From the IMG/VR virus record IMGVR_UViG_3300027969_000039, positions 1 to 64,000 of that record: a stretch of DNA of 64,000 bases; one strand, written 5' to 3'. Below, piece by piece: positions 7,047-58,523 of this stretch (position 1 is its first letter; the number at the start of each line of letters is the position of its first letter). The notes beneath the pieces were generated by a model, which made no database searches, was not told the DNA's origin, and worked only from the letters and a program-made list of their open reading frames with translations. The translations under genes and the position numbers were made by a program.

Positions 7047-7058
7047 GTCTCTTTTTTT
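7031..7058. terminator. bidirectional intrinsic terminator
   Basis: A-tract-GAGAC-CTAA-GTCTC-T7 between convergent genes. Confidence 0.85.
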
Positions 7059-7371: not shown

Positions 7372-7373
7372 GA

Positions 7374-8648: not shown

Positions 8649-8668
8649 TTGTTTCTCCTTGAAATATT

Positions 8669-8736
8669 AGTGAGTTCTAGTCACTACGCGGCGGGGACCG
8701 CATAAACTCGCCGAATGCGAATGTATAATATATTTA
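8669..8736 (-). promoter_or_regulatory. late promoter plus three-hairpin structured 5' leader
   Basis: TAAATA (8731-8736) then UCGC/GCGA, UAUGCGG/CCGCGUA and AGUGA/UCACU stems, then AAGGAG RBS. Confidence 0.55.
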
Positions 8737-8760
8737 TCTCAAGGAGTAAAAATTAACCTA

Positions 8761-9288
8761 TTAGGTCATGTAACCATTTACTACATTAGGATGTGGCATA
8801 CCTAATTCAGTAATACTGAATTCAGTTCCTGCACCGCCACCAGTAGTAATAAATGCTACTACATTGCCTTGACCACAATAAACAGTATTATACTGACCTT
8901 GTGCTGGAAAAATTTGTGACTGCTGTGTAGCAATTGCGTAAGGAACACCTGCATTATTGAAAGTGTATGCAACATTTGATAGTGCTACTCCTGCATTAGC
9001 AGTAAGCGTTAAACTAGTGGCGTTTGCAATACTTGATACGATTCCCACTGTTGTTCCGGTAGTATTTCCTATCCAAGCACCAACTTCAAGCTGAGTGTTA
9101 AATGCTGTTCCCGATCCAGTGACTGTTGCACTATTAGTTGCTGCTGTCGCTGCTCCTGTGCCTGCTACTCTAGGATATCCAGTTACAGCATGAATACCAG
9201 TACCAGTAGTAGATATTCTAATCTTATCTGTTGCTATATTTGCTGATTGTTGCGATACTAAATTACCTGTATATACATATGATGTCAT
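8761..9288 (-). CDS. putative virion structural protein
   Basis: T/A/G-rich 175 aa within late structural cluster. Confidence 0.55.
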   Translation of the reverse strand: MTSYVYTGNLVSQQSANIATDKIRISTTGTGIHAVTGYPRVAGTGAATAATNSATVTGSGTAFNTQLEVGAWIGNTTGTTVGIVSSIANATSLTLTANAGVALSNVAYTFNNAGVPYAIATQQSQIFPAQGQYNTVYCGQGNVVAFITTGGGAGTEFSITELGMPHPNVVNGYMT

Positions 9289-9315
9289 TTTATTATTCCT
9301 ATATCTTATTTATTA

Positions 9316-11949
9316 TTAAAGTCTGCCAATCGCTACTTCAATAACGCCTTCGCCTTCAAAGTTTTCTAGTGATTTACCAATTACTGTACCCATTAATGGA
9401 ATTGTCGATGGACGAGCAAAGCCGCCGCCAGCACTCACTAGCATATCACCTTTACGAATAGGCCCACGAACTTTACACGGAACTCGACCTTGAAGTGCAA
9501 GTGCTACAATGTGTTCGCCTTTGCAAGTTGAATTCATTACATAAGCAGGGTTAGTAGATACTACACCTGCTACTCTTGGTGTCAGTGCTTCTGCTAATGT
9601 AACTTCTTTCTTGCCGCCAAACTCTAGTACAGTGCCTACTTCATAATCAGTGTCTGCTTCATAATATTCTGCCAAGTCAGCATATGTTGCTATTAATCTA
9701 CTACCTGCACTTAAAGCAAAATTACCAGTTAAAGTTCCAACGTTAGTATTTGAGCCCATTGATATGGTTGAATTATTAGCAAATGTTAATCCAGTCAATG
9801 TACCAACACTAGTAATATTTGGTTGAGCAGCAGTTGTTACTGTACCAGCCGTTGTTGCTGCACCACTTAGTGCGCCCACAAATGTAGTTGCTATGAATGC
9901 ACCATTTGCTATGTTAGCAGAGAAAGATGTATTTGAGCCTTGTGCATAGTTTGCTGCTGCTGTACCAGACACAAATGCAGGATAATATGTGCCAGTTGTA
10001 AGTACTGACATTGAAGTGAAATCAGTTACATTGGCATATGCTACGTTTAAATTATTAACACGAGTGGTGCTTGCTATTGTTAATGGTGCAGTACCTGTTA
10101 CTACATTTGATTCTAATATACTAGCAATAACTCTAGTAGTACCTAAATTACCAACGTTAGCATTACCTGCACCTGTATTAAAAGTACCTGCAACATTAAC
10201 ACCCGTTCCAGTGATAGTTACTATTGCATTACTAGTAGCGGTTAATGTGATATTTCCATTTGATGTGATAGCAATATTACTATTACCATTTTGTCTCAAT
10301 CCACTATTAATAGTACCGATGTTACCAGTTGTCATATTACCAGTAGTTAGATTTGCAGTAGTGGCACCAATGTTACCCACATTAGCATTACCTGTTCCTG
10401 TACTAAAAGTACCGGCTACGTTTACACCTGTACTAGTAACAACTAATACATTAGCCACACCATTTGATGATATGTTAACATTGCCTGCTGCTGCTGGAAT
10501 ACTTATACTACTATTGCCATTGGCATGTATACCAATAATATTACCAGTAGTAATATTACTGGTAACAGTTAAATTACCCAATGTGCCAAGGCTAGTTACA
10601 TTTGGTTGTGCTGCTGTTGTTAATGTACCGGTAAGTAATGTGGCACTTAATGCGCCGGTGGCTGCATTAAATGATAAGTTTGCATTACTTGCATGTGCAT
10701 AATTGGCAGTAGAATTTGCATTAACAAATACTGGATAGAATGTTCCTGTTGTTTGTGTTGTTACAACCCCAAAATCTGCTACGTTTGCACGTGCCACATA
10801 TAAATTAGGTACAAGTGTAGTACTTGTCACTGTTATTGGTGCAGTACCGGTTGCAACATTAGATATTAATCTAGGTGATGTTACCAATGCTGTTGCATTG
10901 ATATTTGCTGTATTGACGTTACCTGAAGTAACGGTCAATGTAGTTGTAGTTTTATCAAATGTAAATCCAACAACACCGTTTGAAACATTCTGATCATTGA
11001 ACTGTACTGTAGTATTAGAACCTCCTACTCCACTTCCACCACTAGTTCCCGAATTTAATACTGAAGTTGCTATAGCATTTGGAGCATTTGTATATGTTAA
11101 ACTTGTTCCATTAGCACCAACTGTTCTACCTACGTCAGTATATAATCTAACATTACCTGTTGTTGGGTAATTACTAGCCAATGTCATATAAAAAGATAAA
11201 CCATTAACATTGGCATTAGCAACACCTGTTACTCCTGTTATAGTAACAGAAGTTCCATTGATGTATGGTATTGTATTTGCCACTTGCATTATCAGCGGAC
11301 CGTATAAGGTTCTAGATGCAATTGTTTGAGAATTATTAACAGTGTAAGTACCTGTTCCGCCCGTGCCAGTTCCAAACTCAGTAATATAAGTGCCGGCTGT
11401 TACACTAGTACCGGTTATATAAGTACCAATGCCAACACTACCAGAAGTAACTGCTGTAATAGTAAGCGTAGTAGTTGCTATGCTTCCCGTAAATGTTGTG
11501 GGGAATAAGTTAGCAATATTGCTATATAGTGAACCTTTTGGTGTCCAACTTAAGTTACCGATACCATCTGTTTCTAATACGTAGCCAGCTGCGCCACCGT
11601 CAATTTGAATATTGCTAGCATTAGTTAGTTTTAGTTTTGCATTACTTAATTGGGTAGATCCAGTAAAGTTTTCCCATGTATCAGTGCTTGATACATACGT
11701 CAATATTTGACCGTTAGTTGGAGTAGTGATGTTTAAATTCCCGCCGTAACTCCCGTCAATTTGACTAAAACTAATATCAGAATAAGTAGTTAAAACTTCT
11801 ATGTTTTCATCGGTGTAGGTATTACCTGTTCTACCAATAAAAAGACGATTAGTGTCGGTTGCCCAACCAAATTCAGCATTATCTAATTGAGGTAAGTCAA
11901 CTAGATTACCTGCTCGTTGTTGGATCTTAGAGATTTGTACTATGGCCAT
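9316..11949 (-). CDS. tail fibre/spike: Mtd_N-like N-terminus, beta-repeat shaft, C-terminal intramolecular chaperone (peptidase G2-like)
   Basis: [14 protein letters not shown]...[21 protein letters not shown]; C-term [10 protein letters not shown]...GTVL.FGG...[14 protein letters not shown]...[10 protein letters not shown]. Confidence 0.78.
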
Positions 11950-12000
11950 AAGTGTAATTCTTCACGTTTACACTTATTTATCATAATATTGACTTAATCG

Positions 12001-12690
12001 CTATAGGAATTTCATATAGTATTGCTCTACACGCTTAAACCACATGTCAGAATACTTGTCAAAATCACTACCCTCAATAATAAATTCTTGGTAAATGTTG
12101 TCTTGTGTACACATAAAAATTACACCCTTGCGTATTTTTGTCCCGTGTACTTCATTGTGAGCATTAGCATATGCAGCTAATTGAACAAAATAATCATCAA
12201 TCCATTCACGCTTTTTTAATTTGTTAGATTGTTTGTGGTCCATAATAGCATCACTTCCATCATGTACTCCACACAAGTCAGTTGTGCCGGCATAAATCTT
12301 AGGGAAATACAGGGGAACTTCTGTTCCCCAGTATTCATTGCATTTTACTAATCCCTGCTCAATGATACTCTTTGCCATTTTGTGACTTTGAATACTGTAG
12401 GGATTACTTCCTGGTTCATTAACTATACCAGTCTTAATATAATCTTCAATAAACTTATGCATTCGTGTTCCACGACCTGCTGCTTCAGTTGTAATTGCTT
12501 GTGCTTTTTGAGGGCCCATTCGTTTACGCCACTCATTTAATGCTTTTTTAGATTCTTCTGATTTAGTAGCATCTAGTATTGTTGTAACACTAGGTAGCTT
12601 TTCACCATCCGGCGTAGCATATCTACGTTTACCTTCAATTTCTACCCTACTCATGGGCACATAGTTATATTTGTTTGGATTATACATCAA
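12001..12690 (-). CDS. PD-(D/E)XK exonuclease (Cas4-like, T4-like phage type)
   Basis: LPSVTTIL, RGTRMH, EVPLY..YAGTTD, DHKQS, QLAAY motifs. Confidence 0.85.
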   Translation of the reverse strand: MMYNPNKYNYVPMSRVEIEGKRRYATPDGEKLPSVTTILDATKSEESKKALNEWRKRMGPQKAQAITTEAAGRGTRMHKFIEDYIKTGIVNEPGSNPYSIQSHKMAKSIIEQGLVKCNEYWGTEVPLYFPKIYAGTTDLCGVHDGSDAIMDHKQSNKLKKREWIDDYFVQLAAYANAHNEVHGTKIRKGVIFMCTQDNIYQEFIIEGSDFDKYSDMWFKRVEQYYMKFL

Positions 12691-12732
12691 TATAATTATA
12701 TCAGATAGTATTCTGAAAGTAAATTGATTTGG

Positions 12733-13053
12733 TTAGACTCTAAAACTTTCACCACATCCGCATTTATCACGTTCATTTGGGTTAATAAATTCAAACCCTT
12801 CATTAAGTCCATTGCGGACATAATCTATTGTCATGCCCTGTAGATAAGCACAACTTTTTGGATCAACATATAAAGCGCATCCATCACACTCTATCTTTAT
12901 ATCTTCTATCATTGGTTGATCAACGTATTCAAGTACATAGGCTAAACCAGAACAACCTGTCGTTTTGACACCTATTCTGATTCCTAATCCCTTGCCTCTT
13001 TTTGCAAGAGTTTGTTTTACTTTGTTTGTTGCTTTATCTGTAACAGTTATCAT
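12733..13053 (-). CDS. iscA: iron-sulfur cluster assembly A-type carrier IscA
   Basis: GIRIGVKTTGCSGLAY ... F.F.NPN..DKCGCGESF with all three conserved Cys. Confidence 0.93.
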   Translation of the reverse strand: MITVTDKATNKVKQTLAKRGKGLGIRIGVKTTGCSGLAYVLEYVDQPMIEDIKIECDGCALYVDPKSCAYLQGMTIDYVRNGLNEGFEFINPNERDKCGCGESFRV

Positions 13054-13382
13054 TGTGTTGGCATAGCACTTTGTGCCATTTGTTGTACAACTTGTTGATT
13101 TTGTGTTTGATCTGGGGAAGGTTGAGTTTCATCATGCCCCTTAAAGATAACTTTATCACCTTGGATATTAGATATAATTGTATTCAACGGCGGATTTTTT
13201 ATCATATCATACAAGTCGGTTATATCTAAAACGATACCACCTTTCTCTTGTAGATAAGTTAAAAACTCGTCCGTTGTGTAACTACTAGGATCTATTATAC
13301 CGTTGTCTAAATCAGTTTTAAGTTGATTAACAAGAACGATAAGTTTAGCACTCGCCGGATCAGCAAGTTCAAAGAGAAACAT
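13050..13382 (-). CDS. hypothetical protein
   Basis: ORF in late operon; start refined to MFLFEL. Confidence 0.55.
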   Translation of the reverse strand: MFLFELADPASAKLIVLVNQLKTDLDNGIIDPSSYTTDEFLTYLQEKGGIVLDITDLYDMIKNPPLNTIISNIQGDKVIFKGHDETQPSPDQTQNQQVVQQMAQSAMPTQ

Positions 13383-26269: not shown

Positions 26270-27757
26270 TCATTTGTATGTAAGTTTTTCAACATCAAAT
26301 GGATAATTAGCCTCTTTATAAAATGCTTTTCTTTGTGTAAGATGCCGTTTTGCAAACTTACAATTACTTGTGATATCCCAAATCTGCACGAAATTTTTAT
26401 CTTCTGCTTTACGGATACCACGACCAATACTTTGTATCACCCGAACAAAACTCTTACCCGGTTCAATAAGAACAAGATTAAAGATTCGGGGAATGTTAAT
26501 ACCAACTGCTGCTACACCATAGGTAGCGATAATGATTTTGTTAGTTGCTGTTGCAACTTCATCATATTGTTCTTTGCGTTCATCCATACCAGTATTGCCT
26601 GATACAAACACCACATCATATTCTGTTTTAAAATTACGCAATAGTTCGGCTAATTTGTTATGTAATTCTTTACCGGCTGCCACCCTATCAACAAGTATCA
26701 ATGTATTACCACTGTTCTTAATTGTATCAACCAATTGAGTAATTTTATTTAATCGTTTATCATCTTCAAGTAAGTATTTCAACTCACTCTGGTAGTTACT
26801 AAACTCGACACCATCTTGTAATTGAACAATGTTAACATGGCATTGTGATAATACACCTCTATCTTGCAATTCACTAGCAGATAGTTTGTTAATAACATTA
26901 CCTAGACTGATAAAGATAGCTTGACTTGCGAATTTTTCTTTAGGAATAGTACCAGTCAGTCCCCAACGAATTGGAATCGTACTCATTATTCCAGTCAACA
27001 GTTCTTTTAGTGCATCTGCTTTGGCCATGTGAACCTCGTCTACCATGACACAAACTACACCTTCAAGGAAGTCACCAATCTCAACTTCTGCTTCACCTGC
27101 TTTTGTTTTCTTAAGCATGTTGTTAAGACTCTGCCAAGTACAGATCGTATGTGTCTTGTTGTATTCTTTTCTATCACCAAAGTATACACCAACATCTAAT
27201 CCTAGATTAATGTAATCGGCTTCGGTTTGTGTTACAAGACTTTTGTTTGGAACGATAACAATACTGCGCCCGTAACTTTCAATAGACCAGCTTAGTGCTG
27301 CTGTGATTAATGTCTTGCCAGCGCCTGTAGCAATCTCTTGTAATGATTGTGGGTTCTTTAGAAACTCATTAATGATTGATATCTGATAGTCACGCAATAC
27401 TACAGGTTGTCCTGCGATTGGATGACCTTCGGGCCAATTCTTATGTTTGAATGTCTCTTCGGACACTTCAGCAAAATTGAAAGTTGTACCGTATGTTCGC
27501 AAATCCTCTAGTTCAATATCATAGTCCCTGCTATCAATAAAGGGTAGTATTTCGGGTAGTAGATTGACATAGCTACTACCAGCAAGACTAAAGAAACTTA
27601 CCTTACCATTCCATCTACCTAACCGTACCGCAGGAAGATACCTTGCACCGGGCACTTCATACTCAAACATCTTTACCAATGCTTTTCGTTCACTTAATTC
27701 TAAGCCTTCGATTTTTACATTGACCTCATCCTTGACAATTATTTTGCATTGTTTCAT
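26270..27757 (-). CDS. uvsW: UvsW-like SF2 DNA helicase
   Basis: LRDYQ, ATGAGKT, VDEVH, GLTGT, GINIP, QSIGRGIR. Confidence 0.93.
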   Translation of the reverse strand: MKQCKIIVKDEVNVKIEGLELSERKALVKMFEYEVPGARYLPAVRLGRWNGKVSFFSLAGSSYVNLLPEILPFIDSRDYDIELEDLRTYGTTFNFAEVSEETFKHKNWPEGHPIAGQPVVLRDYQISIINEFLKNPQSLQEIATGAGKTLITAALSWSIESYGRSIVIVPNKSLVTQTEADYINLGLDVGVYFGDRKEYNKTHTICTWQSLNNMLKKTKAGEAEVEIGDFLEGVVCVMVDEVHMAKADALKELLTGIMSTIPIRWGLTGTIPKEKFASQAIFISLGNVINKLSASELQDRGVLSQCHVNIVQLQDGVEFSNYQSELKYLLEDDKRLNKITQLVDTIKNSGNTLILVDRVAAGKELHNKLAELLRNFKTEYDVVFVSGNTGMDERKEQYDEVATATNKIIIATYGVAAVGINIPRIFNLVLIEPGKSFVRVIQSIGRGIRKAEDKNFVQIWDITSNCKFAKRHLTQRKAFYKEANYPFDVEKLTYK

Positions 27758-27807
27758 ATTAGTACTTAGTATAACATAAAGTAATTAGTAAATGCAAACA
27801 TAAAGGT

Positions 27808-27832
27808 AAAAAAAGGGGAACCTAAGTTCCCC
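27808..27832 (-). terminator. intrinsic terminator
   Basis: GGGGAAC-ctaa-GTTCCCC with T-tract on minus strand. Confidence 0.85.
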
Positions 27833-27855
27833 TGAAAATCAGTAAGTAAATCTAC

Positions 27856-28887
27856 TCAAAGATTCTTCATGCAAGTTGACTTCGCAAGTTCATGCCAGTT
27901 GCCAGGGTTGATCTTTACCAAGTCAGCAATCTTCAACACCATACGCAGGCTGATCTCACGCAATTGATTGCAGTTGGCCCACATGTATTCCATGACACTT
28001 TCTTCCTGCTCTTTAGTAAAAGCATAGTCAACAAACAAGCCGGGGTCAGCATCACGATGCACCTGCTTGATACGCATCATTTTATCACGTTCGGTGTTGA
28101 TAGTCAAATCCAGAAAGTGACAACGACTTTGCAATGCATCCAAATGAGGTTGCATTTTACCTGATTTTTTAGAATCAAACGATTTGTTTGTGATGAAGAT
28201 GATAGAGCCGTGAAAGTTGAAAGTATTGGGCACTCCCTCTTCGCGTAGAATACGTGAATCTTTGTTGTAAGAGATACGCCGTGTCTTGCTAGAATCCAAT
28301 GCACCTTTCAGGATGTTGACCGCATCTTGATCGTCCCAGATATCACAGTCATCAAACACCAACACGTTTTTAGCGTCAGAATATTTGTACAGTAATACGA
28401 ACAAGCCGATAGCAGACATCGCGCCTTTGACAGTCTCAAAACGGATCTTGCGATCTGCAATATGATCAAACATGCTAGCTTTTTCCATCTGCAATGTCAC
28501 GCCGTGACTCTTGCCGACACCGGGAGGGCCTGTCACAATCATAGCACGGATATCACCGTTGATACATGCTTTTGACATCTCATCCAATACTGCAAAACGA
28601 CCTGCGATACGGTCCATCGCTTCCTTATCAGTCTCGGTAGACACTTCTGCCTTTGCCTTGAATTCTACTGTATTGCCTACCACCGTTTCTCCATTCATGA
28701 ATTGAATATCTTCAATGCTTCCGACATTGACACGGACCTGAGGTCCACCCACTGCAAACTGACCATCATTCTTAACAGTAACAAATCCACCCTTCTTACC
28801 AACTTGATAACCTTTGACTAGGGTGAACACTTCACCAGATACAGGGTTATTGCGATAAGAACCAGAGAGAATGCGAATTGTTGACAT
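27856..28887 (-). CDS. AAA+/P-loop ATPase (early)
   Basis: GPPGVGKS Walker A; VLVFDDCD Walker B; IIFITN; ALQSRC. Confidence 0.85.
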   Translation of the reverse strand: MSTIRILSGSYRNNPVSGEVFTLVKGYQVGKKGGFVTVKNDGQFAVGGPQVRVNVGSIEDIQFMNGETVVGNTVEFKAKAEVSTETDKEAMDRIAGRFAVLDEMSKACINGDIRAMIVTGPPGVGKSHGVTLQMEKASMFDHIADRKIRFETVKGAMSAIGLFVLLYKYSDAKNVLVFDDCDIWDDQDAVNILKGALDSSKTRRISYNKDSRILREEGVPNTFNFHGSIIFITNKSFDSKKSGKMQPHLDALQSRCHFLDLTINTERDKMMRIKQVHRDADPGLFVDYAFTKEQEESVMEYMWANCNQLREISLRMVLKIADLVKINPGNWHELAKSTCMKNL

Positions 28888-28920: not shown

Positions 28921-28949
28921 ATTATACACTAATGCCCATTTGTTGTCAA
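28921..28949 (-). promoter_or_regulatory. sigma70 early promoter (variant)
   Basis: TTGACA-17 nt-TATAAT followed by family-type leader CTTAATCAGTTAA..AAAGGA. Confidence 0.85.
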
Positions 28950-29164
28950 GCCTTGAGTATGTCCACGATACGCTGATGTATCAGGTCCATTTCAGCCTGC
29001 TCAACATAGAAGTCGGTCTTGGGGTCATAGTACTGACCTTGGGCAGTATCGTAGTACAGGACATGACCGGAGAAATTGAAGGGACCTTCTAGACCCTTGC
29101 GAGGACCATACTTGGTACGCATCTCATCCATTTGCGTCTTGTCTGCGATAACTTTGTAACCCAT
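28946..29164 (-). CDS. small early hypothetical protein (cassette gene)
   Basis: MGYKVIADK...LYYDTAQGQYYDPKTDFYV; AAGGAG RBS; stop TGA inside next TTGACA. Confidence 0.75.
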   Translation of the reverse strand: MGYKVIADKTQMDEMRTKYGPRKGLEGPFNFSGHVLYYDTAQGQYYDPKTDFYVEQAEMDLIHQRIVDILKA

Positions 29165-29194
29165 CAGAAACTCCTTTTGACTGAATAAGACTCT

Positions 29195-29223
29195 ATTATA
29201 TACCCAAAACCATTTAATGTCAA
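29195..29223 (-). promoter_or_regulatory. 29-bp repeated early promoter, copy 1
   Basis: TTGACATTAAATGGTTTTGGGTATATAAT. Confidence 0.92.
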
Positions 29224-29414
29224 CTAAAATCACAAGCCTTATAGACTGCTTCCTGTACTGCGGTATCAGTAACTTCCTCAAAACGCTCGTCCTGAGCCAA
29301 GGCCTTGAGCAATCCTCGAACAACAGACCAACTCAAGTTTTGACTGATTGCCAACTTTACTATGGATCCAACTGCATCATTACCAGCGTCTGTAAACATT
29401 GCGAAATTTGTCAT
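29220..29414 (-). CDS. small early hypothetical protein (cassette gene)
   Basis: 64 aa; RBS; stop in -35 of next promoter. Confidence 0.75.
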   Translation of the reverse strand: MTNFAMFTDAGNDAVGSIVKLAISQNLSWSVVRGLLKALAQDERFEEVTDTAVQEAVYKACDFS

Positions 29415-29448
29415 TTTCTAAGTCCTTTAATTAACTGTCTAAGTATGT

Positions 29449-29477
29449 ATTATATACCCAAAACCATTTAATGTCAA
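29449..29477 (-). promoter_or_regulatory. 29-bp repeated early promoter, copy 2
   Basis: identical to copy 1. Confidence 0.92.
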
Positions 29478-29662
29478 GCCGGTAGAACAACTTCAGTTGG
29501 AATTTGAGACTCACGCCAGGCATTCATATAGGCTTCACGCTCGGCCCGAACCTTGAGGATGCTCCGACTAAAGCGGCGGTCATAGTAGGCCCACGCACCG
29601 CTATCTACCCAGGTTTGGCGGCTGCATCGGACTTTGTTTACCTTGTGTTTTCTCATTTTCAT
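29474..29662 (-). CDS. small basic hypothetical protein
   Basis: 62 aa; stop in -35. Confidence 0.65.
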   Translation of the reverse strand: MKMRKHKVNKVRCSRQTWVDSGAWAYYDRRFSRSILKVRAEREAYMNAWRESQIPTEVVLPA

Positions 29663-29665
29663 ATA

Positions 29666-29932
29666 TTAAGCCCGGTAAGTAGAATAATTACGGATTTTGC
29701 TTTGTTTATTAGCATGGCTTTCGTTGAATTTAATCTCATAACCACGCTGACGTAGTGCATTGATCAGTACTGACAGGTCGCAGTCTTCTTCCAAGAAAGC
29801 ATTGGTACCGTTCTGGTAGCTGTAAGTACTAATCTTATCAGCGATACCAAGTGCTACCAACTTTGCTTTGGGGAAGCGGGCCCATGCATGACCCGGGTCT
29901 GCGAACACTTTGATAGAGATTTTTTTAGTCAT
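29666..29932 (-). CDS. conserved hypothetical protein
   Basis: DPGHAW...ISTYSY...FLEEDCD motif seen in phage/mobile-element proteins. Confidence 0.7.
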   Translation of the reverse strand: MTKKISIKVFADPGHAWARFPKAKLVALGIADKISTYSYQNGTNAFLEEDCDLSVLINALRQRGYEIKFNESHANKQSKIRNYSTYRA

Positions 29933-29943
29933 TTTGAGGTCCT

Positions 29944-30198
29944 TTACAATACTTGAGAAACTGAATAGTTATTCACTTTTGTGATATTTTCAACATGCCA
30001 ATCAATTATAGACTGTTCAGTATTGAGCGGCAATTCTCTAAAGTAAAGAGTTTTGCCTAGCATTACTTTATCTTTTGCGTTTAGCTTAGTGTAGTCACTA
30101 GCAGCAATCAGCAAACAAATTTCTTCGTTGCTGTAGGGCCGCTTTTTGACAGACACTTTAAAATACAAAGTACTGATTGCATTTGCTTTGAATTTCAT
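29944..30198 (-). CDS. small early hypothetical protein
   Basis: 84 aa directly after promoter copy 3. Confidence 0.7.
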   Translation of the reverse strand: MKFKANAISTLYFKVSVKKRPYSNEEICLLIAASDYTKLNAKDKVMLGKTLYFRELPLNTEQSIIDWHVENITKVNNYSVSQVL

Positions 30199-30225
30199 AG
30201 AGACCTTTCAACTGAATAAGACTCT

Positions 30226-30254
30226 ATTATATACCCAAAACCATTTAATGTCAA
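30226..30254 (-). promoter_or_regulatory. 29-bp repeated early promoter, copy 3
   Basis: identical to copy 1. Confidence 0.92.
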
Positions 30255-30469
30255 CCAAGGACCTCAGTCACAGTATAATTATACCGTGTATAACCAACGT
30301 CAGTGGATCCACCATAACCAGCAAAACTCTTATTGTTCATTGCCAACTTAGCAGTACCCTTCCGAGCCATTTTTTGTGCCTCGTTGTACCAATAAGCGCC
30401 TTCAGTTATCCGTGTATGTCCACTAGCGGTTTCACGCCGTACTACATCAAAATTAAAACTGCGTACCAT
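30251..30469 (-). CDS. small hypothetical protein
   Basis: start refined to MVRSFNF; stop in -35. Confidence 0.6.
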   Translation of the reverse strand: MVRSFNFDVVRRETASGHTRITEGAYWYNEAQKMARKGTAKLAMNNKSFAGYGGSTDVGYTRYNYTVTEVLG

Positions 30470-30470
30470 T

Positions 30471-30602
30471 TTATTGCTCCATCGGGTCACCAAGTGTATA
30501 CTCGGTGATCCATTCAATTGTAAAATCTTCACCTCTATGTTCTGCAACATAGATGCAAAGTGCTTCCAGCGTACGGAAAATCAAATCGCCAATTCTATAC
30601 AT
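30471..30602 (-). CDS. 43-aa hypothetical protein
   Basis: MYRIGDLIFRTLEALCIYVAEHRGEDFTIEWITEYTLGDPMEQ; TAATG coupling to upstream gene. Confidence 0.55.
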   Translation of the reverse strand: MYRIGDLIFRTLEALCIYVAEHRGEDFTIEWITEYTLGDPMEQ

Positions 30603-30976
30603 TATGCCACCTTCCGAAAATATTGATAGGGCAAGCCCAGATCATAGCACAGATATTCCCAGTCGCCATTAGCGTTGCTAGCGTCCATGATCCAGCGCAA
30701 TGCAGTCTCACGGTCACGCGCGCCCATGCAGATAGTGTTGGTGACATGCTGCTCAAACTTATCCACAGCTTCCTTCTCAGCAACCTTACGCTGGGCTTCC
30801 TCACGCACGATCACAGCTTCCAAACTTGCAAACTCCAGTTGGAAGTCTTGCAGCGTCCAAGTGCTGGTGTCGATACCACGAGGGCGAACACCATGTGCGT
30901 CCTTGTACATATCCCAGTAGATGCACTGGGCTTGTTCCAAGTCAGACATTTGTTCCCAAGTAGTGAATTCAGACAT
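30602..30976 (-). CDS. conserved phage hypothetical protein
   Basis: IYWDMYKDAHGVRPRG motif; start refined to MSEFTTW. Confidence 0.75.
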   Translation of the reverse strand: MSEFTTWEQMSDLEQAQCIYWDMYKDAHGVRPRGIDTSTWTLQDFQLEFASLEAVIVREEAQRKVAEKEAVDKFEQHVTNTICMGARDRETALRWIMDASNANGDWEYLCYDLGLPYQYFRKVA

Positions 30977-31005
30977 ATTTGTTCCTTTAATCAATCTAAG
31001 CCTCT

Positions 31006-31034
31006 ATTATAGACCCAAAACCATTTAATGTCAA
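31006..31034 (-). promoter_or_regulatory. 29-bp repeated early promoter, copy 4
   Basis: TTGACATTAAATGGTTTTGGGTCTATAAT (1 mismatch). Confidence 0.92.
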
Positions 31035-31228
31035 CCGAAAACAAATTCCCTGACCCACTCAAAACGGGTAGTAGAAGGGACCCACTTGAAGTGTTCCCGC
31101 TTGCGGCTTATCTTCTCAAAATCCATGCAGACCATGACCCAACCCTTCTCAGGGCTGAAGCCAACTGTTTCTGCAACACGGACTACTTCGACCATGCTGC
31201 CGTCTGTCATCTTTGCTACAGTAGTCAT
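31031..31228 (-). CDS. small hypothetical protein
   Basis: 65 aa; GGAG RBS; stop in -35. Confidence 0.7.
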   Translation of the reverse strand: MTTVAKMTDGSMVEVVRVAETVGFSPEKGWVMVCMDFEKISRKREHFKWVPSTTRFEWVREFVFG

Positions 31229-31238
31229 TTTCTACTCC

Positions 31239-31400
31239 TTACGCAAACGATCCACGCACTTCTTTAGCGCCGGGGATTTCTTCACATTCACATACCCAGT
31301 CAGAGAATGATTCGTAGTATCCCACGAAATACTCCGGACGCATTTCAGTCTTGCAGTATGGGCACACTGGCATCACAATTGGTTCTATTTTTTCAGACAT
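31239..31400 (-). CDS. 53-aa zinc-ribbon protein
   Basis: MSEKIEPIVMPVCPYCKTEM...WVCECEE; AAGGAG RBS; below ORF-track cutoff. Confidence 0.7.
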   Translation of the reverse strand: MSEKIEPIVMPVCPYCKTEMRPEYFVGYYESFSDWVCECEEIPGAKEVRGSFA

Positions 31401-31430
31401 AATGTTCTCCTTTAATCAATCTAAGAGTAC

Positions 31431-31459
31431 ATTATATACCCAAAACCATTTAATGTCAA
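31431..31459 (-). promoter_or_regulatory. 29-bp repeated early promoter, copy 5
   Basis: identical to copy 1. Confidence 0.92.
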
Positions 31460-31602
31460 GTTTGGGTAACCTTATTTACCGCAGATTCAGCATCTTTTTT
31501 TCCTGTAGGACCGAAAAAGTGCCATGGATATCCGTGTACTACGGCTACCCACCCGGGGGTTTTCCTGCCGTAGTACACGCTTGCTTTTACCAAAAAAGCC
31601 AT
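31456..31602 (-). CDS. 48-aa ORF starting at the ATG inside a degenerate promoter repeat
   Basis: MAFLVKASVYYGRKTPGWVAVVHGYPWHFFGPTGKKDAESAVNKVTQT; AAGGA 10 nt upstream; stop in -35 of copy 5. Confidence 0.5.
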   Translation of the reverse strand: MAFLVKASVYYGRKTPGWVAVVHGYPWHFFGPTGKKDAESAVNKVTQT

Positions 31603-31608
31603 TTAATG

Positions 31609-31884
31609 TCAATCCTTTTTCATAACATATTCAAACAGGATCCACTTGGCACGATTGAGACATTGACGGGCATCTTCGGCCCGCATGAAGTCAACTTCAC
31701 CGTACTCGGTGCTGACCATTTCTTGGGCGTCACTCATCAGGCTAGCAGCCATCATAGCAGGACCGGAGAATTTGAAAGTGAAACTAGATTCCACAGACTC
31801 ACGCATACCTGCTTCGGTCACGCCATACATGCGGACTTCACGCTTTTGTTTCTCGGTCAGTAGATCATACACGGTTGCAGTCAT
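31609..31884 (-). CDS. small early hypothetical protein
   Basis: 91 aa; AAGGAG RBS; stop in degenerate -35 at 31607-31612. Confidence 0.75.
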   Translation of the reverse strand: MTATVYDLLTEKQKREVRMYGVTEAGMRESVESSFTFKFSGPAMMAASLMSDAQEMVSTEYGEVDFMRAEDARQCLNRAKWILFEYVMKKD

Positions 31885-31917
31885 AAAAAGCTCCTTTAGT
31901 TAACTGTCTATAAGAGC

Positions 31918-31946
31918 ATTATATACCCAAAACCATTTAATGTCAA
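31918..31946 (-). promoter_or_regulatory. 29-bp repeated early promoter, copy 6
   Basis: identical to copy 1. Confidence 0.92.
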
Positions 31947-32818
31947 GTTTTGGTAAAGTCTATTTCCCAGTTTTTTAGATGAAAATAACTAATTCCGTCC
32001 CGTTCCATATGCTTATAAAGCCCTTCTAGGGGAACAGAATCTTGCTCAAAAAAGTGTTCCCAAAGATGATTCAATTTGTTGTCAAGTGGAATTTCAATTT
32101 TGCAAAGTTTGTTGTCATCATCTTTCAACCAGTATTCTGAAAATTTATTTGTTTTATGTTTAACAACAAACTTTTTAATAGGCTTTAAAGTTTTTGTACC
32201 TGACCAGGCTGTAGTGTGTACGGGGAATTCAAACCTTGTATTCAATTCTCTAACCATTTCATCAAATTCAATATCATATTCATAGAATTCAGGTAGACGA
32301 TAAATTATCGGCATCAATTCTTCTCTGACTACTTTACTATCACCGTGGATAAATGTACTTAAATCTTTTCTAAATTTAGTTAACCTTTGTTCACGCAAGG
32401 TCAACACCACGAGTTTCTTGCTGTAATAATCACGGATGACATTAGCCTTATCTCTATCTTCCTGAATCATTTCTCTGAACAAGATACTATCAGTAAGTTT
32501 AGTCGGTCTATCATTGGGATTAGCTAAAATATCAATTTTGTGACTGAGCAGTGTTCGCAATCTATGCCAAGTAACACTCAATGCTAATACATCTTCTGTA
32601 GTCTCATACACTTCATATTTTTTTACATACGAACTATCTTGATACAAGTCATCCCAAGATGTAGTACCATTCAATCCTGCAAGAGTATGAATATTGAGTG
32701 GTGAGGGGTTTTGTGTAGTAGCCCCGATGCTACCTTTAGTGATAGCATTACCATATATTGCAAGTTGTTTCTGTACTGCAAGTTGTTTCTGTAGTATGTT
32801 TATGCTTGAATTAGCCAA
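31943..32818 (-). CDS. hypothetical protein
   Basis: 291 aa; own TTGACA-17-TAAAAT promoter at 32845-32873; stop in -35 of copy 6. Confidence 0.65.
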   Translation of the reverse strand: MANSSINILQKQLAVQKQLAIYGNAITKGSIGATTQNPSPLNIHTLAGLNGTTSWDDLYQDSSYVKKYEVYETTEDVLALSVTWHRLRTLLSHKIDILANPNDRPTKLTDSILFREMIQEDRDKANVIRDYYSKKLVVLTLREQRLTKFRKDLSTFIHGDSKVVREELMPIIYRLPEFYEYDIEFDEMVRELNTRFEFPVHTTAWSGTKTLKPIKKFVVKHKTNKFSEYWLKDDDNKLCKIEIPLDNKLNHLWEHFFEQDSVPLEGLYKHMERDGISYFHLKNWEIDFTKT

Positions 32819-32955
32819 TTGTATATTCCATGTTAATATGAGTTATTTTACTATAGAAAATAAAGAATGTCAATATTTTTTTGCCCTATTACGCCTGCGG
32901 GTTGCTTCTTCTTCCCCAAATATTTCTTCCCAAGTTTTTCCTTTTTATCAAAATA

Positions 32956-33417
32956 TTACGATATTGATATATCTTCCATGCCGGCCGCTCTTAAACGTAC
33001 AATGTGACCTAGCATGAAATTTTTTGATTCAAATGCTTTGATTATACCAAGCCAACGATTCCTTAATAATGCTACTTCGTTAATCAATATTTCATATTCA
33101 ATAACTTCATCTTCACCCTCAACATACTTGTCAGCATCACGGCTTGTCAATGCTCTATTATATGCTTCTAAATATTTTTGAAAATGTGTTCGGCGAATTT
33201 TCCGTAACTGAATATTCAAGTAGTTAAGTACCGCTTCCACTTCTTGTAACTGATTGAATCTATGTTCGGTAATGCCGGGTAAAGCGGCAATGTTCTTTTC
33301 AACATTGCCGTATATCTTTACCTCTTTCTTAGCATTATCTAATTCAGTTTCAAAGTGTTGAATAAAATCAGGTATCACAGCCAGATTGACTGTTATCCTT
33401 GTGTACCAATTTGACAT
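32956..33417 (-). CDS. uvsY: recombination mediator UvsY
   Basis: KYLEAYNRALTSRDADKYVEGE...IIKAFESKNFMLGHIVRLRAAG; next to uvsX. Confidence 0.85.
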   Translation of the reverse strand: MSNWYTRITVNLAVIPDFIQHFETELDNAKKEVKIYGNVEKNIAALPGITEHRFNQLQEVEAVLNYLNIQLRKIRRTHFQKYLEAYNRALTSRDADKYVEGEDEVIEYEILINEVALLRNRWLGIIKAFESKNFMLGHIVRLRAAGMEDISIS

Positions 33418-33660
33418 TTAATCCCATTCGTCTAAGTCATCTTCTTCAAAATCTTCATCTTCCTCTGGAAAATGCTCGTCTGCATAACCCTTCAATGCTT
33501 TAGTGATATCTTTGTCCTTGAAGGCATCTTTGATATCTTCAATCTCATAATTGTTATCAATTAAAAAATTAACAAGAGTATCTGCCGCATCATCACGCTC
33601 ACTTAAATCAATATGTTCACGCAATGCATCCCAAACTTCAGCGATTATATCTAAACTCAT
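33418..33660 (-). CDS. small acidic hypothetical protein
   Basis: 80 aa, D/E-rich tail. Confidence 0.65.
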   Translation of the reverse strand: MSLDIIAEVWDALREHIDLSERDDAADTLVNFLIDNNYEIEDIKDAFKDKDITKALKGYADEHFPEEDEDFEEDDLDEWD

Positions 33661-34724
33661 TCTGTAACTTCCTCCTTAGATGTTACATTACTTATCACAC
33701 TTTTAGTTTTTCCTGTATATTCAAGCATTACTTTATCTAGTATGCCGTCTTTGTTAGCTTCCCAACCTTTGCGAAACGCTTTGAGAATCTCGCCATCTTC
33801 GGTAGTGTAAACTAAACTGTTGCCTTCTTTCTTCAAAGCACCGGACTTCTCAAGCATATCAGTTAAGCCACTGTATGGACTCATGCCTGTCTCGTATGGA
33901 ATCTTGACTTGGATGCTCTCAAAAGGTTTCGCATAGCGAGTTTTCATAATCTTACAAGCAGCACGGATACCATTCACTTCAGCAACCTTGTTACCATCCT
34001 CATCCTCTTTAAGTTTGAGTTTTTTCATAGCAACAACAATTGAACTTGCGTAAACAAAACCTTGACCACCACTGATTTTATCATCTGGATCAAACATATC
34101 TTGACTTGCGTATGTGTGATTAGTAGCAACTAATCCTACATTGTGACTACCAAACATATTGACACAGTTACGAACAAGTGCTGTTAGTGCTTTGGGCTTG
34201 CGACCCATGTCACCTTTCATATCACCTGCTTCAAACTGATTAACGTCAGTTGGAGTCAATAGCATACCAAGACTGTCAATGACAAATAATACTTTTGGTT
34301 TGTCATCTTCTGACATTGCTTTATATGACTTCATAAATTCTGATATAGTTTTACCTACATCATCAATCATAGCCATGTTGAGTTTAAGCAATTTAGTTTC
34401 GCTTGTATCTACACCTAATGCGTGTAGCCATTTTTCATCTAAGGCATTTTCGCTGTCAATTAAGACAACATAGATTCCTTGTTGTTGTGCGTGTCTGACG
34501 AGGTTTCCGGAGCAGATGAAACTTTTTCCTGATCCAGACTCTCCGGCAAAGACAGTAACTTTACCAAGAGGTACACCTTTGTTAAAATCACCGCTAATGA
34601 GATAATTGAGTCCATAATTTCCTGTAGAGATCCAATCGGTTGGATCATTGTATCCTATGCTAAGTCCCTCAATACTTTTTGTAATCTCTCTACGGAACTT
34701 GCTTACATCAAATGGTTTTGCCAT
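33657..34724 (-). CDS. uvsX: RecA-like recombinase UvsX
   Basis: GESGSGKS, DSENA, VIDSLG, NHTY, SGGQG..YASS. Confidence 0.93.
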   Translation of the reverse strand: MAKPFDVSKFRREITKSIEGLSIGYNDPTDWISTGNYGLNYLISGDFNKGVPLGKVTVFAGESGSGKSFICSGNLVRHAQQQGIYVVLIDSENALDEKWLHALGVDTSETKLLKLNMAMIDDVGKTISEFMKSYKAMSEDDKPKVLFVIDSLGMLLTPTDVNQFEAGDMKGDMGRKPKALTALVRNCVNMFGSHNVGLVATNHTYASQDMFDPDDKISGGQGFVYASSIVVAMKKLKLKEDEDGNKVAEVNGIRAACKIMKTRYAKPFESIQVKIPYETGMSPYSGLTDMLEKSGALKKEGNSLVYTTEDGEILKAFRKGWEANKDGILDKVMLEYTGKTKSVISNVTSKEEVTE

Positions 34725-57787: not shown

Positions 57788-57816
57788 ATTATATACCCAA
57801 AACCATTTAATGTCAA
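57788..57816 (-). promoter_or_regulatory. 29-bp repeated early promoter, copy 7
   Basis: identical to copy 1. Confidence 0.92.
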
Positions 57817-57820
57817 CTGT

Positions 57821-58048
57821 TTACGCACAGATTTCAAACAACATTTCGCTACTGGAACCGTTGACTACACGGACTTTTTTGTCATTAACCATGATGTAGC
57901 CATAGTTGCCGTTATCATAGATACCGTGAGGGCAGGGTTCAATCGTCACTTTACGGATAATTTCACAAAAACCCCAACGCTTAGTAGGCAACTTACCTTG
58001 AAACAATCGCATGTTTTCAAGGGAAGTAATGAGAATTTTTGCTTTCAT
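57821..58048 (-). CDS. small early hypothetical protein
   Basis: 75 aa after promoter copy 8. Confidence 0.7.
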   Translation of the reverse strand: MKAKILITSLENMRLFQGKLPTKRWGFCEIIRKVTIEPCPHGIYDNGNYGYIMVNDKKVRVVNGSSSEMLFEICA

Positions 58049-58081
58049 AATCTACTCTGTTCGTTGACTGTCTAAGTATGT

Positions 58082-58110
58082 ATTATATACCCAAAACCAT
58101 TTAATGTCAA
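58082..58110 (-). promoter_or_regulatory. 29-bp repeated early promoter, copy 8
   Basis: identical to copy 1. Confidence 0.92.
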
Positions 58111-58193
58111 CCGAAATATTGAGTGTGTACGATTACCAAAATGGCTATATATGCTCCGACCACGATCCCAACTAGCATTCCAAGAAAAAACAT
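58107..58193 (-). CDS. 28-aa single-TM peptide
   Basis: MFFLGMLVGIVVGAYIAILVIVHTQYFG; AGGAG RBS; stop in -35 of copy 8. Confidence 0.6.
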   Translation of the reverse strand: MFFLGMLVGIVVGAYIAILVIVHTQYFG

Positions 58194-58203
58194 CTCCTAC
58201 TCC

Positions 58204-58461
58204 TTACGCAAATTCGTAGAATTTAACAGTAGGATCCAACTTTTGTAGTTCTTTTGCAGCCTGTGACAATGCACGATGCTTGGCCTGAACCTGACTACGG
58301 GGCAGTTCACCGTCACAGGTCAAGTTCTCAGGGCTGAGGTCGCTGTCCAGACAAGCAGCAACTACCTGACGACCTTTAGCAGTCTGTATCTCATACTGAG
58401 GACCTTTGAACAATTTGTTCCATTTGTTCTTTTGATCAATGTATTTTTGCAATGCTGACAT
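58204..58461 (-). CDS. small early hypothetical protein
   Basis: LSPENLTCDGE motif; follows promoter copy 9. Confidence 0.7.
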   Translation of the reverse strand: MSALQKYIDQKNKWNKLFKGPQYEIQTAKGRQVVAACLDSDLSPENLTCDGELPRSQVQAKHRALSQAAKELQKLDPTVKFYEFA

Positions 58462-58494
58462 AATTAACTCCGTTTGTTGACTGTCTAAGCCTCT

Positions 58495-58523
58495 ATTATA
58501 GACCCAAAACCATTTAATGTCAA
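58495..58523 (-). promoter_or_regulatory. 29-bp repeated early promoter, copy 9
   Basis: identical to copy 4 (GGGTCTATAAT). Confidence 0.92.

What the first reader, a model, noticed from the sequence alone, without database searches (positions are those of the whole stretch)
29195..31946. Six near-identical 29-bp sigma70 promoters with a conserved spacer
Seen: TTGACA-TTAAATGGTTTTGGGT(A/C)-TATAAT occurs at 29195, 29449, 30226, 31006, 31431 and 31918. Established: sigma70 needs the spacer length, not its sequence. Inference: the conserved 16-nt spacer means either recent duplication/gene conversion or a protein-binding operator (phage activator/repressor or anti-sigma system) that switches all early cassettes off together.
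Basis: partly seen in the sequence, partly recalled or inferred. Interest (0 to 1): 0.6.

Follow-up and report, generated by a model that had tools for sequence, protein, structure and literature searches.

The report
Mobile early-promoter cassettes in jumbo phage
The six identical promoters are real and are the core of a roughly 60-base "promoter + leader + ribosome-site" cassette that heads small unknown genes and is shuffled among related uncultured freshwater giant phages; this is a stem-loop-less variant of the promoter cassettes (PeSLs) known from T4-type phages, not a demonstrated operator.

Summary
The 29-mer (perfect TTGACA, 17-nt spacer, perfect TATAAT) lies on the minus strand at all six coordinates. 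There are 3 more copies in the window and 14 (up to 3 mismatches) in the 303-kb virus record, all co-oriented with the genes; chance expectation is 0.

The genome is an uncultured freshwater jumbo myovirus distantly related to T4 and the Rak2/CBB group. Conservation is not limited to the spacer. It runs from the -35 through a conserved 5' leader to the Shine-Dalgarno and ATG (about 60 nt) and stops sharply upstream.

The array sits in a hyperplastic region between the UvsX/UvsY-like genes and an AAA-protein/helicase pair. Relatives carry 6-8 such promoters there with different small ORFs, and homology blocks start at promoter edges. One copy is truncated inside the spacer.

More than half of the copies supply the upstream gene's stop codon (TGA inside TTGACA). 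Orthologous spacers stay 15-17/17 identical while neighbouring third-codon positions are 59-78% identical. More distant lineages have their own homogenised spacers.

Best reading: PeSL-like mobile early-promoter cassettes, evolving in concert by recombination under functional constraint. An operator is neither supported nor excluded: there is no dyad, no regulator was found, and other perfect promoters have unrelated spacers.

The parts
31918..31946 (-). Cassette promoter copy (exact 29-mer). Its -35 contains the TGA stop of the upstream 291-aa ORF.
31431..31459 (-). Cassette promoter copy (exact).
31006..31034 (-). Cassette promoter copy (C at -13).
30226..30254 (-). Cassette promoter copy (exact).
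29449..29477 (-). Cassette promoter copy (exact).
29195..29223 (-). Cassette promoter copy (exact).
57788..58523 (-). Second array in the window. Exact copies lie at 57788-57816, 58082-58110 and 58495-58523 (C variant), each followed by a conserved leader and a 75-92-aa ORF.
28921..28949 (-). Diverged family member: perfect hexamers, 9/17 spacer matches, cassette-type leader. It lies in front of the conserved 343-aa AAA-type gene. Some relatives have the canonical 29-mer at this orthologous site.
31599..31612 (-). Truncated copy (-35 plus the first 8 spacer bases) at which homology to relatives ends. Relatives L126 and L133 have a full promoter here, so the breakpoint is inside the spacer.
29162..29194 (-). 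Conserved leader, SD and ATG of the 29195 cassette. The equivalent leaders are 29412-29448, 30196-30225, 30974-31005, 31398-31430 and 31882-31917.
28946..31884 (-). Hyperplastic array of about 11 small ORFs (43-124 aa) driven by the six cassettes: 31609-31884, 31239-31400, 31031-31228, 30602-30976, 30471-30602, 30251-30469, 29944-30198, 29666-29932, 29474-29662, 29220-29414 and 28946-29164. There are no Pfam hits, and two PHROGs of unknown function.
31943..34724 (-). Conserved upstream flank: UvsX-like recombinase (33657-34724), an 80-aa acidic ORF, a UvsY-like mediator (32956-33417) and a 291-aa ORF (31943-32818).
26270..28887 (-). Conserved downstream flank: 343-aa AAA-type protein (phrog_1250) and a 495-aa DNA helicase (UvsW position by synteny with CBB and Vibrio phage 2.275.O).
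3426..3454 (-). Half-diverged family member. It shares the -35 and the first 10 spacer bases, then has a TGn extended -10. Another diverged member lies at 56744-56772.

Best explanation
Each 29-mer is a consensus host-sigma-70-type early promoter that forms the core of a cassette of about 60-65 nt (-35, 17-nt spacer, -10, conserved leader of about 20 nt, Shine-Dalgarno, ATG). The cassette heads small ORFan modules in hyperplastic regions of an uncultured freshwater jumbo myovirus.

The cassettes are the shared homology at which gene modules are gained, lost and swapped between co-infecting relatives by the phage's general homologous recombination. In more than half of the copies the TGA inside TTGACA also terminates the upstream gene, so a module flanked by two cassettes carries its own start and stop signals.

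The near-identity of the spacer comes from concerted evolution of this repeat family (copying and conversion through recombination). This acts on top of purifying selection on parts of the spacer that probably tune RNA-polymerase binding: AAAT at -27..-24 and GGGT at -17..-14.

Shown: the anatomy, the distribution, breakpoints at or in the cassettes, slow evolution of the spacer, and lineage-specific consensus.

Inferred: promoter activity, early timing, the recombination mechanism, and the relative weight of selection versus conversion.
For: Anatomy and position
- There are 14 copies on the gene strand, against 0 expected.
- Conservation runs from the -35 to the SD and drops abruptly upstream.
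- The ATG lies 27-34 nt after the -10.
- The ORFs behind the cassettes are ORFans.
- The array is inserted between conserved genes, the UvsX/UvsY-like pair and the AAA/helicase pair. These are contiguous or nearly so in the cultured relatives.

Shuffling
- Relatives have 6-8 cassette promoters at this site with different ORF content, and homology blocks begin exactly at the 5' edge of a promoter.
- HSP ends pile up at promoter edges.
- A truncated copy marks a breakpoint inside the spacer.
- Relative L124 has a hybrid leader.
- The cassette precedes at least 78 ORF clusters and follows 124 different upstream flanks. Of 45 ORF clusters, 32 have two or more different upstream neighbours.
- Metagenome contigs break at the copies and show many alternative joints and loose ends there.

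Stop codon in the -35
- An upstream open frame ends in the -35 TGA in 176 of 318 copies, against 52 and 45 in the control frames. Other perfect promoters show no such bias.

Evolution of the spacer
- Orthologous spacers are 15-17/17 identical while third-codon identity of the adjacent gene is 0.59-0.78.
- Genomes about 80-84% identical in nucleotide sequence keep the same family consensus.
- More distant lineages (UvsX 77-87% identical) and phage CBB have their own homogenised spacers. Within-contig identity is 11.1/17 against 7.2/17 between contigs, and 0 of 1000 permutations reach this.

Precedent
- PeSL cassettes in T4-type phages (PMC2839356, PMC4122927).
Against: - No transcription start, promoter strength or timing was measured. 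The only RNA data are assembled contigs, which may include DNA.
- No recombination intermediate (mini-circle) could be tested.
- The alternative joints come from short contigs of mixed populations.
- Selection and conversion cannot be separated cleanly with these data. Identical consensus across lineages of about 80% identity could also reflect a dedicated factor.
- The defining stem-loop of PeSLs is absent.
Confidence: 0.65

Rival explanations
1. The spacer is an operator. A phage-encoded, virion-injected or host factor binds the conserved 17 nt and co-regulates (activates or shuts off) this subset of early promoters.
For: - The spacer evolves about 4-5 times more slowly than neighbouring third-codon positions.
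- Variation is confined to three positions, -29, -21 and -13.
- The consensus is kept in genomes about 80% identical.
- Lineage-specific spacers could reflect co-evolving factors. CBB's equivalent promoters carry AGTACT palindromes on both sides of the -35 and spacer.
Against: - There is no dyad or direct repeat beyond chance. Arms of 4 bp occur in 74% of shuffled 29-mers.
- About ten equally perfect, co-oriented promoters lack the spacer.
- The orthologous AAA-gene promoter works with many spacer variants across relatives.
- Conservation extends equally into the leader, which fits a copied cassette better than a 17-nt site.
- No AsiA, sigma-70-family or RegB homologue was found, although the record is only 86% complete and the AsiA and RegB searches matched none of the tool's control genomes, so they do not show absence.
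Confidence: 0.12
2. Selection only. The whole 29-mer is an optimised 'über-promoter' for the host RNA polymerase. Every copy is kept identical by purifying selection, and recombination plays no part in maintaining identity.
For: - Spacer sequence can modulate sigma-70 promoters (PMC3130263).
- T4 early promoters have extra consensus and a GT-rich stretch 5' of the -10 (PMC2988021, PMC1524935).
- AAAT/GG and the GT before the -10 persist even in diverged copies and in distant lineages.
Against: - Related lineages use different, internally homogenised spacers, such as a TGn-type -10-proximal half.
- Perfect promoters with unrelated spacers coexist in the same genome.
- The canonical spacer is distributed patchily at an orthologous site relative to gene identity.
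- Breakpoints lie at and inside the cassettes.
- No host genome among about 185,000 species carries the motif.
Confidence: 0.15
3. The copies come from recent tandem duplication within this one genome and have had no time to diverge.
For: Six copies lie within 2.8 kb and are identical.
Against: - The ORFs between the copies are unrelated to each other.
- The same 29-mer is in more than 117 contigs from many metagenomes.
- It sits at orthologous sites in relatives with 56-83% protein identity.
- Copies occur in four separate genome regions.
Confidence: 0.03
4. The motif is read by a phage-specific sigma factor or by an appropriated polymerase, as in T4 MotA/AsiA middle promoters, and not by unmodified host sigma-70.
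For: - The related phage CBB encodes its own sigma factor in its early region (PMC5259590).
- The extended conserved sequence resembles phage-specific promoter classes.
Against: - Both hexamers are the exact sigma-70 consensus at the optimal 17-nt spacing.
- No Sigma70_r2 or AsiA match was found in the record.
- Middle-type promoters normally lack a -35.
Confidence: 0.05

Closest known systems
PeSLs (promoter-early stem-loops) of T4-type phages RB49/phi1, T4/PST and KVP40/nt-1 (Arbiol et al. 2010, PMC2839356; Comeau et al. 2014, PMC4122927)
   Same: - A repeated near-consensus sigma-70 early promoter with N17 spacing, extending to the SD and start codon of the downstream gene.
- Concentrated in hyperplastic regions in front of ORFans.
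- Found at insertion, deletion and replacement boundaries between relatives.
- 'Half' elements keeping only the -35 exist.
- Proposed to act as homology patches for modular shuffling.
   Different: - There is no stem-loop or terminator and no clear AT-rich UP region upstream. Instead the upstream ORF usually ends in the TGA of the -35.
- The spacer itself is almost invariant, whereas the six perfect promoters of RB49 have mostly unrelated spacers.
- The host phage is an uncultured freshwater jumbo myovirus of at least 303 kb, outside Straboviridae.
- Mini-circles and promoter or terminator activity are untested here.
T4-type early promoters ('über' UP/-35/TGn/-10 promoters; PMC2988021, PMC1524935)
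   Same: - A host sigma-70 consensus with additional conserved positions outside the hexamers, including a GT-rich stretch just 5' of the -10.
- Many copies in front of novel small ORFs.
- All co-oriented with the early genes.
   Different: - T4 uses GTTTAC with TGn and UP elements. Here the -35 is exactly TTGACA, with no TGn and no UP.
- Identity among copies is far higher (29/29).
- The role of an Alt-like modification is unknown.
RpoD-like early promoters of Rak2-like jumbo phages (Pectobacterium phage CBB; Buttimer et al. 2017, PMC5259590)
   Same: - The phage group is related (UvsX 65% identical).
- Perfect TTGACA-N17-TATAAT promoters cluster in a region of short hypothetical ORFs.
- A subset shares a nearly identical spacer and flanks.
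   Different: - CBB's conserved spacer is a different sequence, sharing only AAATGGTT, offset by 2 nt.
- It has a conserved UP-like upstream block and AGTACT palindromes.
- No match to the present cassette exists in any cultured phage record.
Integron gene cassettes (attC-bounded ORFs)
   Same: Arrays of small, mostly unknown ORFs, each bounded by a conserved repeat at which cassettes are exchanged.
   Different: - No integrase or attC structure is present.
- The repeat is a promoter plus leader, so every cassette is self-expressed.
- Exchange is presumed to use general homologous recombination.
- This is an analogy only, not membership.

Membership tests
PeSL (promoter-early stem-loop) cassette | Near-consensus sigma-70-like promoter (-35, N17, -10) | tested here: met
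   All copies match 12/12 hexamer positions with a 17-nt spacer.
PeSL (promoter-early stem-loop) cassette | Stable stem-loop (terminator/attenuator) immediately upstream of the promoter | tested here: not met
   Only 1 of 14 copies (141483) has a terminator-like hairpin upstream. In 7 of 14 an ORF runs into the -35. No conserved upstream columns are seen.
PeSL (promoter-early stem-loop) cassette | AT-rich (UP-like) region upstream of the -35 | tested here: inconclusive
   There is only weak A-richness, at most about 0.4 bit per position upstream of the -35, across 210 non-redundant copies.
PeSL (promoter-early stem-loop) cassette | Shine-Dalgarno and start codon at the 3' end of the element | tested here: met
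   A conserved leader, a purine-rich SD and an ATG 27-34 nt after the -10 are present in 301 copies.
PeSL (promoter-early stem-loop) cassette | Preferential location in hyperplastic regions next to ORFans | tested here: met
   The array lies between conserved UvsX/UvsY-like and AAA/helicase genes. Its ORFs have no Pfam hit.
PeSL (promoter-early stem-loop) cassette | Sits at indel or replacement boundaries between related phages | tested here: met
   Homology blocks start at promoter 5' edges, a truncated copy sits at a breakpoint, and upstream neighbours vary.
PeSL (promoter-early stem-loop) cassette | Demonstrated promoter and terminator activity, and mini-circle formation between flanking copies | not testable with these tools
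   Only assembled contigs were available. Joints seen at copy edges come from short contigs of mixed populations.
Operator / regulator binding site within a promoter | Dyad symmetry or repeated half-sites in the conserved stretch | tested here: not met
   Only 4-bp inverted arms are present, as in 74% of shuffled 29-mers, and there is no direct repeat other than TATA.
Operator / regulator binding site within a promoter | Site shared by all co-regulated promoters | tested here: not met
   About 10 perfect, co-oriented promoters in the same genome have unrelated spacers.
Operator / regulator binding site within a promoter | A cognate DNA-binding protein | tested here: inconclusive
   No AsiA, Sigma70_r2 or RegB family match was found in an 86%-complete record. 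The AsiA and RegB searches also matched none of the tool's 14 control genomes, so those two say nothing about absence. Small ORFans were not examined structurally.
T4-type early promoter class | Recognised by unmodified host sigma-70 holoenzyme immediately after infection | not testable with these tools
   This is inferred from the perfect consensus. The host is unknown, and no prokaryote genome carries the motif.

The most novel reading that the evidence does not exclude
The cassette is a recombinase-free, integron-like 'punctuation' element of a widespread freshwater jumbo-phage clade. One repeat of about 60 nt supplies the stop codon of the preceding gene (TGA, then TAA two codons later) and the promoter, leader and ribosome site of the next gene.

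On this reading the unusually invariant spacer exists for one of two reasons. Either a dedicated phage factor reads it, co-regulating or targeting recombination to this promoter subclass, or it is selected as the homology substrate itself.
Probability: 0.15. Interest if true: 0.6.

Novelty: new variant of a known kind. Interest (0 to 1): 0.4.

Why it matters
The finding extends the PeSL concept in two ways. The concept had been shown for a few cultured T4-type phages. Here it appears in an abundant, uncultured clade of freshwater jumbo phages, and in a stripped-down form without a stem-loop, with the upstream stop codon embedded in the -35.

It also gives a concrete data set for separating selection on promoter spacers from concerted evolution: at least 78 ORF families behind one cassette, with lineage-specific spacer variants.

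Practically, the motif is a marker for early and hyperplastic regions. It also explains why assemblies of these phages fragment at these sites.

Tried and rejected
- **Cultured relatives of the region.** Megablast of the region against 50,697 phage records gave no match. Blastn of one cassette gave only chance-level hits.
- **Host or prophage source.** A scan of about 185,000 prokaryote genomes with a degenerate 29-mer gave 0 hits, so host-promoter mimicry or a prophage origin is not indicated.
- **Upstream stem-loops.** Folding 90 nt upstream of each of the 14 copies showed no shared hairpin. The terminator scan found none between the cassettes.
- **Operator-like symmetry.** None was found beyond chance.
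- **Mini-ORF in the promoter.** ATG-GTT-TTG-GGT-ATA-TAA lies inside the promoter. It was rejected as the cause of conservation because the variable positions are first and second codon positions, not third.
- **Regulator candidates.** No Sigma70_r2, AsiA or RegB family was found in the genome. These are weak negatives; the AsiA and RegB searches also matched none of the tool's control genomes.
- **Rfam.** Nothing was found in the promoter region.
- **Reads.** All 24 runs are held only as assembled contigs. Transcription starts, strand, levels and true mini-circles therefore could not be read. The 'goes back' and 'skips' joints have sides of about 30 nt and come from mixed populations, so they are treated only as evidence of alternative neighbours.
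- **Locus-specific variants.** G003 and G004 turned out to be 100% identical to this genome, so they say nothing about the inheritance of locus-specific variants.
Full report
**1. Observation**

The 29-mer TTGACATTAAATGGTTTTGGGT(A/C)TATAAT occurs exactly at the six stated coordinates.
- All copies are on the minus strand.
- Three further exact copies lie at 57788, 58082 and 58495.
- None of 100 dinucleotide shuffles gave a match.
- The consensus scan scores all copies 12/12 with a 17-nt spacer.

The window is the first 64 kb of a 303,057-bp IMG/VR virus record (86% complete, 37% G+C).
- That record has 14 copies with up to 3 mismatches, all on the minus strand, in four regions: 29-32, 57.8-58.5, 140.8-141.5 and 156.4-156.8 kb.
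- Genes in 0-220 kb are overwhelmingly on the minus strand.
- The record has 23 perfect TTGACA-N17-TATAAT sites, against 0.22 in shuffles.

**2. What the genome is**

- The UvsX-like recombinase at 33657-34724 is 62-68% identical to those of jumbo myoviruses: Sinorhizobium phage Phosso, Vibrio phage 2.275.O, Pectobacterium phage CBB and Cronobacter phage GAP32.
- PHROG scans confirm a UvsX-like protein, a UvsY-like protein, a DNA helicase and an AAA-type protein around the array.
- Public runs that hold the region are freshwater, lake and river metagenomes from 15 studies.
- An Rfam 'freshwater-2' motif lies elsewhere in the window.

The genome is therefore an uncultured freshwater jumbo phage distantly related to T4.

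**3. Anatomy of the repeat**

Aligning the copies shows that conservation does not stop at the -10.
- A leader follows, with the core CTTAGACAGTTAA and a few discrete variants.
- After it come a purine-rich SD and an ATG 27-34 nt after the -10.

A spacer-independent census of sites was made over all fetched loci, requiring at most 1 mismatch in the two hexamers.
- Spacer identity to the canonical sequence is bimodal, with peaks at 15-17/17 and at about 5/17.
- In 210 non-redundant cassette copies, information content is high from the -35 to about +25. It is moderate at the SD and essentially nil upstream of the -35.
- Within the spacer, variation is concentrated at -29, -21 and -13.
- AAAT (-27..-24) and GGGT (-17..-14) are nearly as invariant as the hexamers.
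- No shared upstream hairpin exists, and there is no TGn.

In the 29-32 kb array, all six upstream ORFs end in the TGA contained in TTGACA. The bias was then tested across the clade:

| Promoter class | Upstream frame ending in the -35 TGA | Control frame 1 | Control frame 2 |
|---|---|---|---|
| Cassette copies (n = 318) | 176 | 52 | 45 |
| Perfect promoters with unrelated spacers | 35 | 39 | 34 |

A frame counts here only if it is open for at least 23 codons upstream. The cassette thus often supplies the stop codon of the preceding gene. TAA follows two codons later in the same frame.

**4. Context**

- The six cassettes drive about 11 small ORFs (43-124 aa). They have no Pfam hit and only two PHROGs of unknown function.
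- The array lies between conserved blocks: the UvsX-like, UvsY-like and 291-aa genes upstream, and the AAA-type and helicase genes downstream.
- In the cultured relatives CBB and Vibrio phage 2.275.O the corresponding genes are contiguous or nearly so.

The array therefore has the character of a hyperplastic insertion.

**5. Relatives**

Relatives were also chosen independently of the promoter, through the 291-aa protein (24 loci, 56-100% amino-acid identity).
- All of them keep a promoter immediately after that gene's stop, with 0-3 changes.
- Third-codon identity of the gene is only 0.59-0.78, whereas spacer identity is 15-17/17.
- The leader class and the downstream gene differ among them. 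L124 has a hybrid leader.

Synteny tables for five relatives show 6-8 cassette promoters at this site with different ORF content.
- Homology blocks start exactly at the 5' edge of a promoter. Examples are L133 7247 with window 31034, L133 7971 with window 29223, and L133 9472 with window 28949.
- HSP ends pile up at promoter edges and at the truncated copy.
- The truncated copy at 31599-31612 corresponds to a full promoter in L126 and L133. Homology ends after the eighth spacer base, so the breakpoint is inside the spacer.

Across the loci the cassette precedes at least 78 ORF clusters and has 38 leader variants and 124 different upstream flanks.

Logan contigs of three independent freshwater and river runs were laid on the region.
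- They break at the copies.
- Word depth is about 10-fold higher there.
- Many alternative joints and loose ends lie at copy edges.
- This is consistent with many different neighbours in the population. Because these are short contigs of mixed populations, they are not proof of mini-circles.

**6. Selection or homogenisation?**

Two observations point to functional constraint.
- The spacer changes 4-5 times more slowly than neighbouring third-codon positions.
- AAAT(GG) after the -35 and GT before the -10 persist even at the orthologous AAA-gene promoter, whose spacer otherwise varies by up to 8/17 among relatives. They also persist in more distant lineages.

Four observations point to copying and concerted evolution.
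- At that orthologous site the canonical spacer appears patchily with respect to gene identity.
- The same genome has about ten perfect, co-oriented promoters with unrelated spacers, several with TGn, so the spacer is not needed to make a consensus promoter.
- Relatives chosen by UvsX (77-87% identity) carry analogous promoter-leader arrays with their own homogenised spacers. L150, for example, has three identical copies with a TGn-type -10-proximal half, and the L165/L190/L193 group has yet another consensus.
- In those UvsX-chosen relatives, within-contig spacer identity is 11.1/17 against 7.2/17 between contigs, and 0 of 1000 label permutations reach this.

Comparison with cultured phages gives the same picture.
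- CBB has its own family of four near-identical early promoters with a different spacer and conserved flanks.
- The six perfect promoters of RB49 mostly have unrelated spacers.

Genomes about 80-84% identical to this one (G001 with 13 copies, G002 with 7) keep the same modal 29-mer.

Taken together, this is a repeat family evolving in concert, overlaid on partial functional constraint.

**7. The operator idea**

- The 29-mer has no dyad or repeat beyond chance.
- Conservation is not confined to the spacer.
- Other perfect promoters lack the spacer.
- No AsiA, sigma-70-family or RegB homologue was found in the record. These are weak negatives, because the record is 86% complete and the AsiA and RegB searches also matched none of the tool's control genomes.
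- No bacterial genome carries the motif, and no cultured phage does.

The idea is unsupported but not excluded. I give it about 0.12.

**8. Comparison with what is known**

The closest described system is the PeSL of T4-type phages (PMC2839356, PMC4122927).
- PeSLs are repeated strong sigma-70-type early promoters with SD and ATG.
- They are concentrated in hyperplastic regions in front of ORFans.
- They lie at indel and replacement boundaries.
- 'Half' elements exist.
- Recombination between them shuffles modules and forms mini-circles.

Five of those features are met here. The stem-loop is tested and absent, and the AT-rich upstream region is at best weak. This is therefore not a PeSL in the strict sense but a stem-loop-less variant. 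It has two additional traits: a nearly invariant spacer and a stop codon embedded in the -35.

Other relevant literature:
- Extra consensus in T4 early promoters, including a GT-rich stretch 5' of the -10, is documented (PMC2988021, PMC1524935).
- Spacer sequence can modulate sigma-70 promoters (PMC3130263).
- RpoD-like early promoters clustered before short ORFs are described for CBB (PMC5259590).

**9. Verdict**

- The feature is real and far beyond chance.
- Most likely (0.65) it is a set of mobile early-promoter/leader cassettes that punctuate ORFan modules and evolve in concert through recombination, with part of the spacer under functional constraint.
- Novelty: a new variant of a known kind.
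- Interest: moderate (0.4).
- It would rise if a spacer-specific factor, or cassette-targeted recombination, were demonstrated.

Noticed in passing
window 8646-8722 (-): Rfam 'freshwater-2 RNA' (RF02980) match at 65.2 bits against a gathering score of 49.9. This motif is known only from freshwater metagenomes, and here it lies inside a jumbo-phage genome.
   Followed up: no
window 31460-31612 (-): Module without a complete promoter. It holds a truncated cassette copy, then a 13-bp-stem hairpin (fold z-score -2.1), and a possible 48-aa ORF (31456-31602) whose ATG is the ATG inside the truncated spacer. A metatranscriptome contig covers 31499-31649. It could be a small RNA, an attenuator or a tiny gene.
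   Followed up: partly
window 3426, 59345; G000 36106, 71806, 81978, 86962, 111068, 141617 (all -): A second class of near-perfect promoters has unrelated spacers but a TGn extended -10. The cassette class lacks TGn and has GGGTA instead.
   Followed up: partly
L141 (Pectobacterium phage CBB, record 6000-13155; repeated at 361923-369078): CBB's early promoters in the terminal repeat share a near-identical spacer and a conserved upstream block. The palindrome AGTACT occurs on both sides of the -35 and spacer. This arrangement looks more operator-like than the one in the window.
   Followed up: partly
RB49 record NC_005066.1 115005-115033 and 121708-121736 (-): Two perfect RB49 promoters have a GGGG...CCCC inverted repeat inside the 17-nt spacer itself.
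   Followed up: no
cassette leaders, e.g. window 31886-31905 (-): The leader segment GTTAACTAAAGGAG resembles, from memory, the T7 gene 10 'epsilon' translational enhancer context (TTAACTTTA...GGAG). If so, the cassette may also be optimised for translation. This was not tested.
   Followed up: no
window 29881-30321: A 441-nt contig from an RNA (metatranscriptome) run is 100% identical and spans promoter 30226-30254. This is consistent with read-through from upstream cassettes, as no terminators lie between them, but DNA carry-over cannot be excluded.
   Followed up: partly
window 33418-33660 (-): An 80-aa, very acidic ORF (D/E-rich C-terminus) is wedged between the UvsX-like and UvsY-like genes. 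It has no family match.
   Followed up: no
L165, L190, L193 (IMG/VR relatives, UvsX 79-80% identical): These contigs carry arrays of promoters with TTGACC as the -35, their own conserved spacer (ATTCCCATTCTGC type) and their own conserved leader. They represent a parallel cassette family in a sister lineage.
   Followed up: partly
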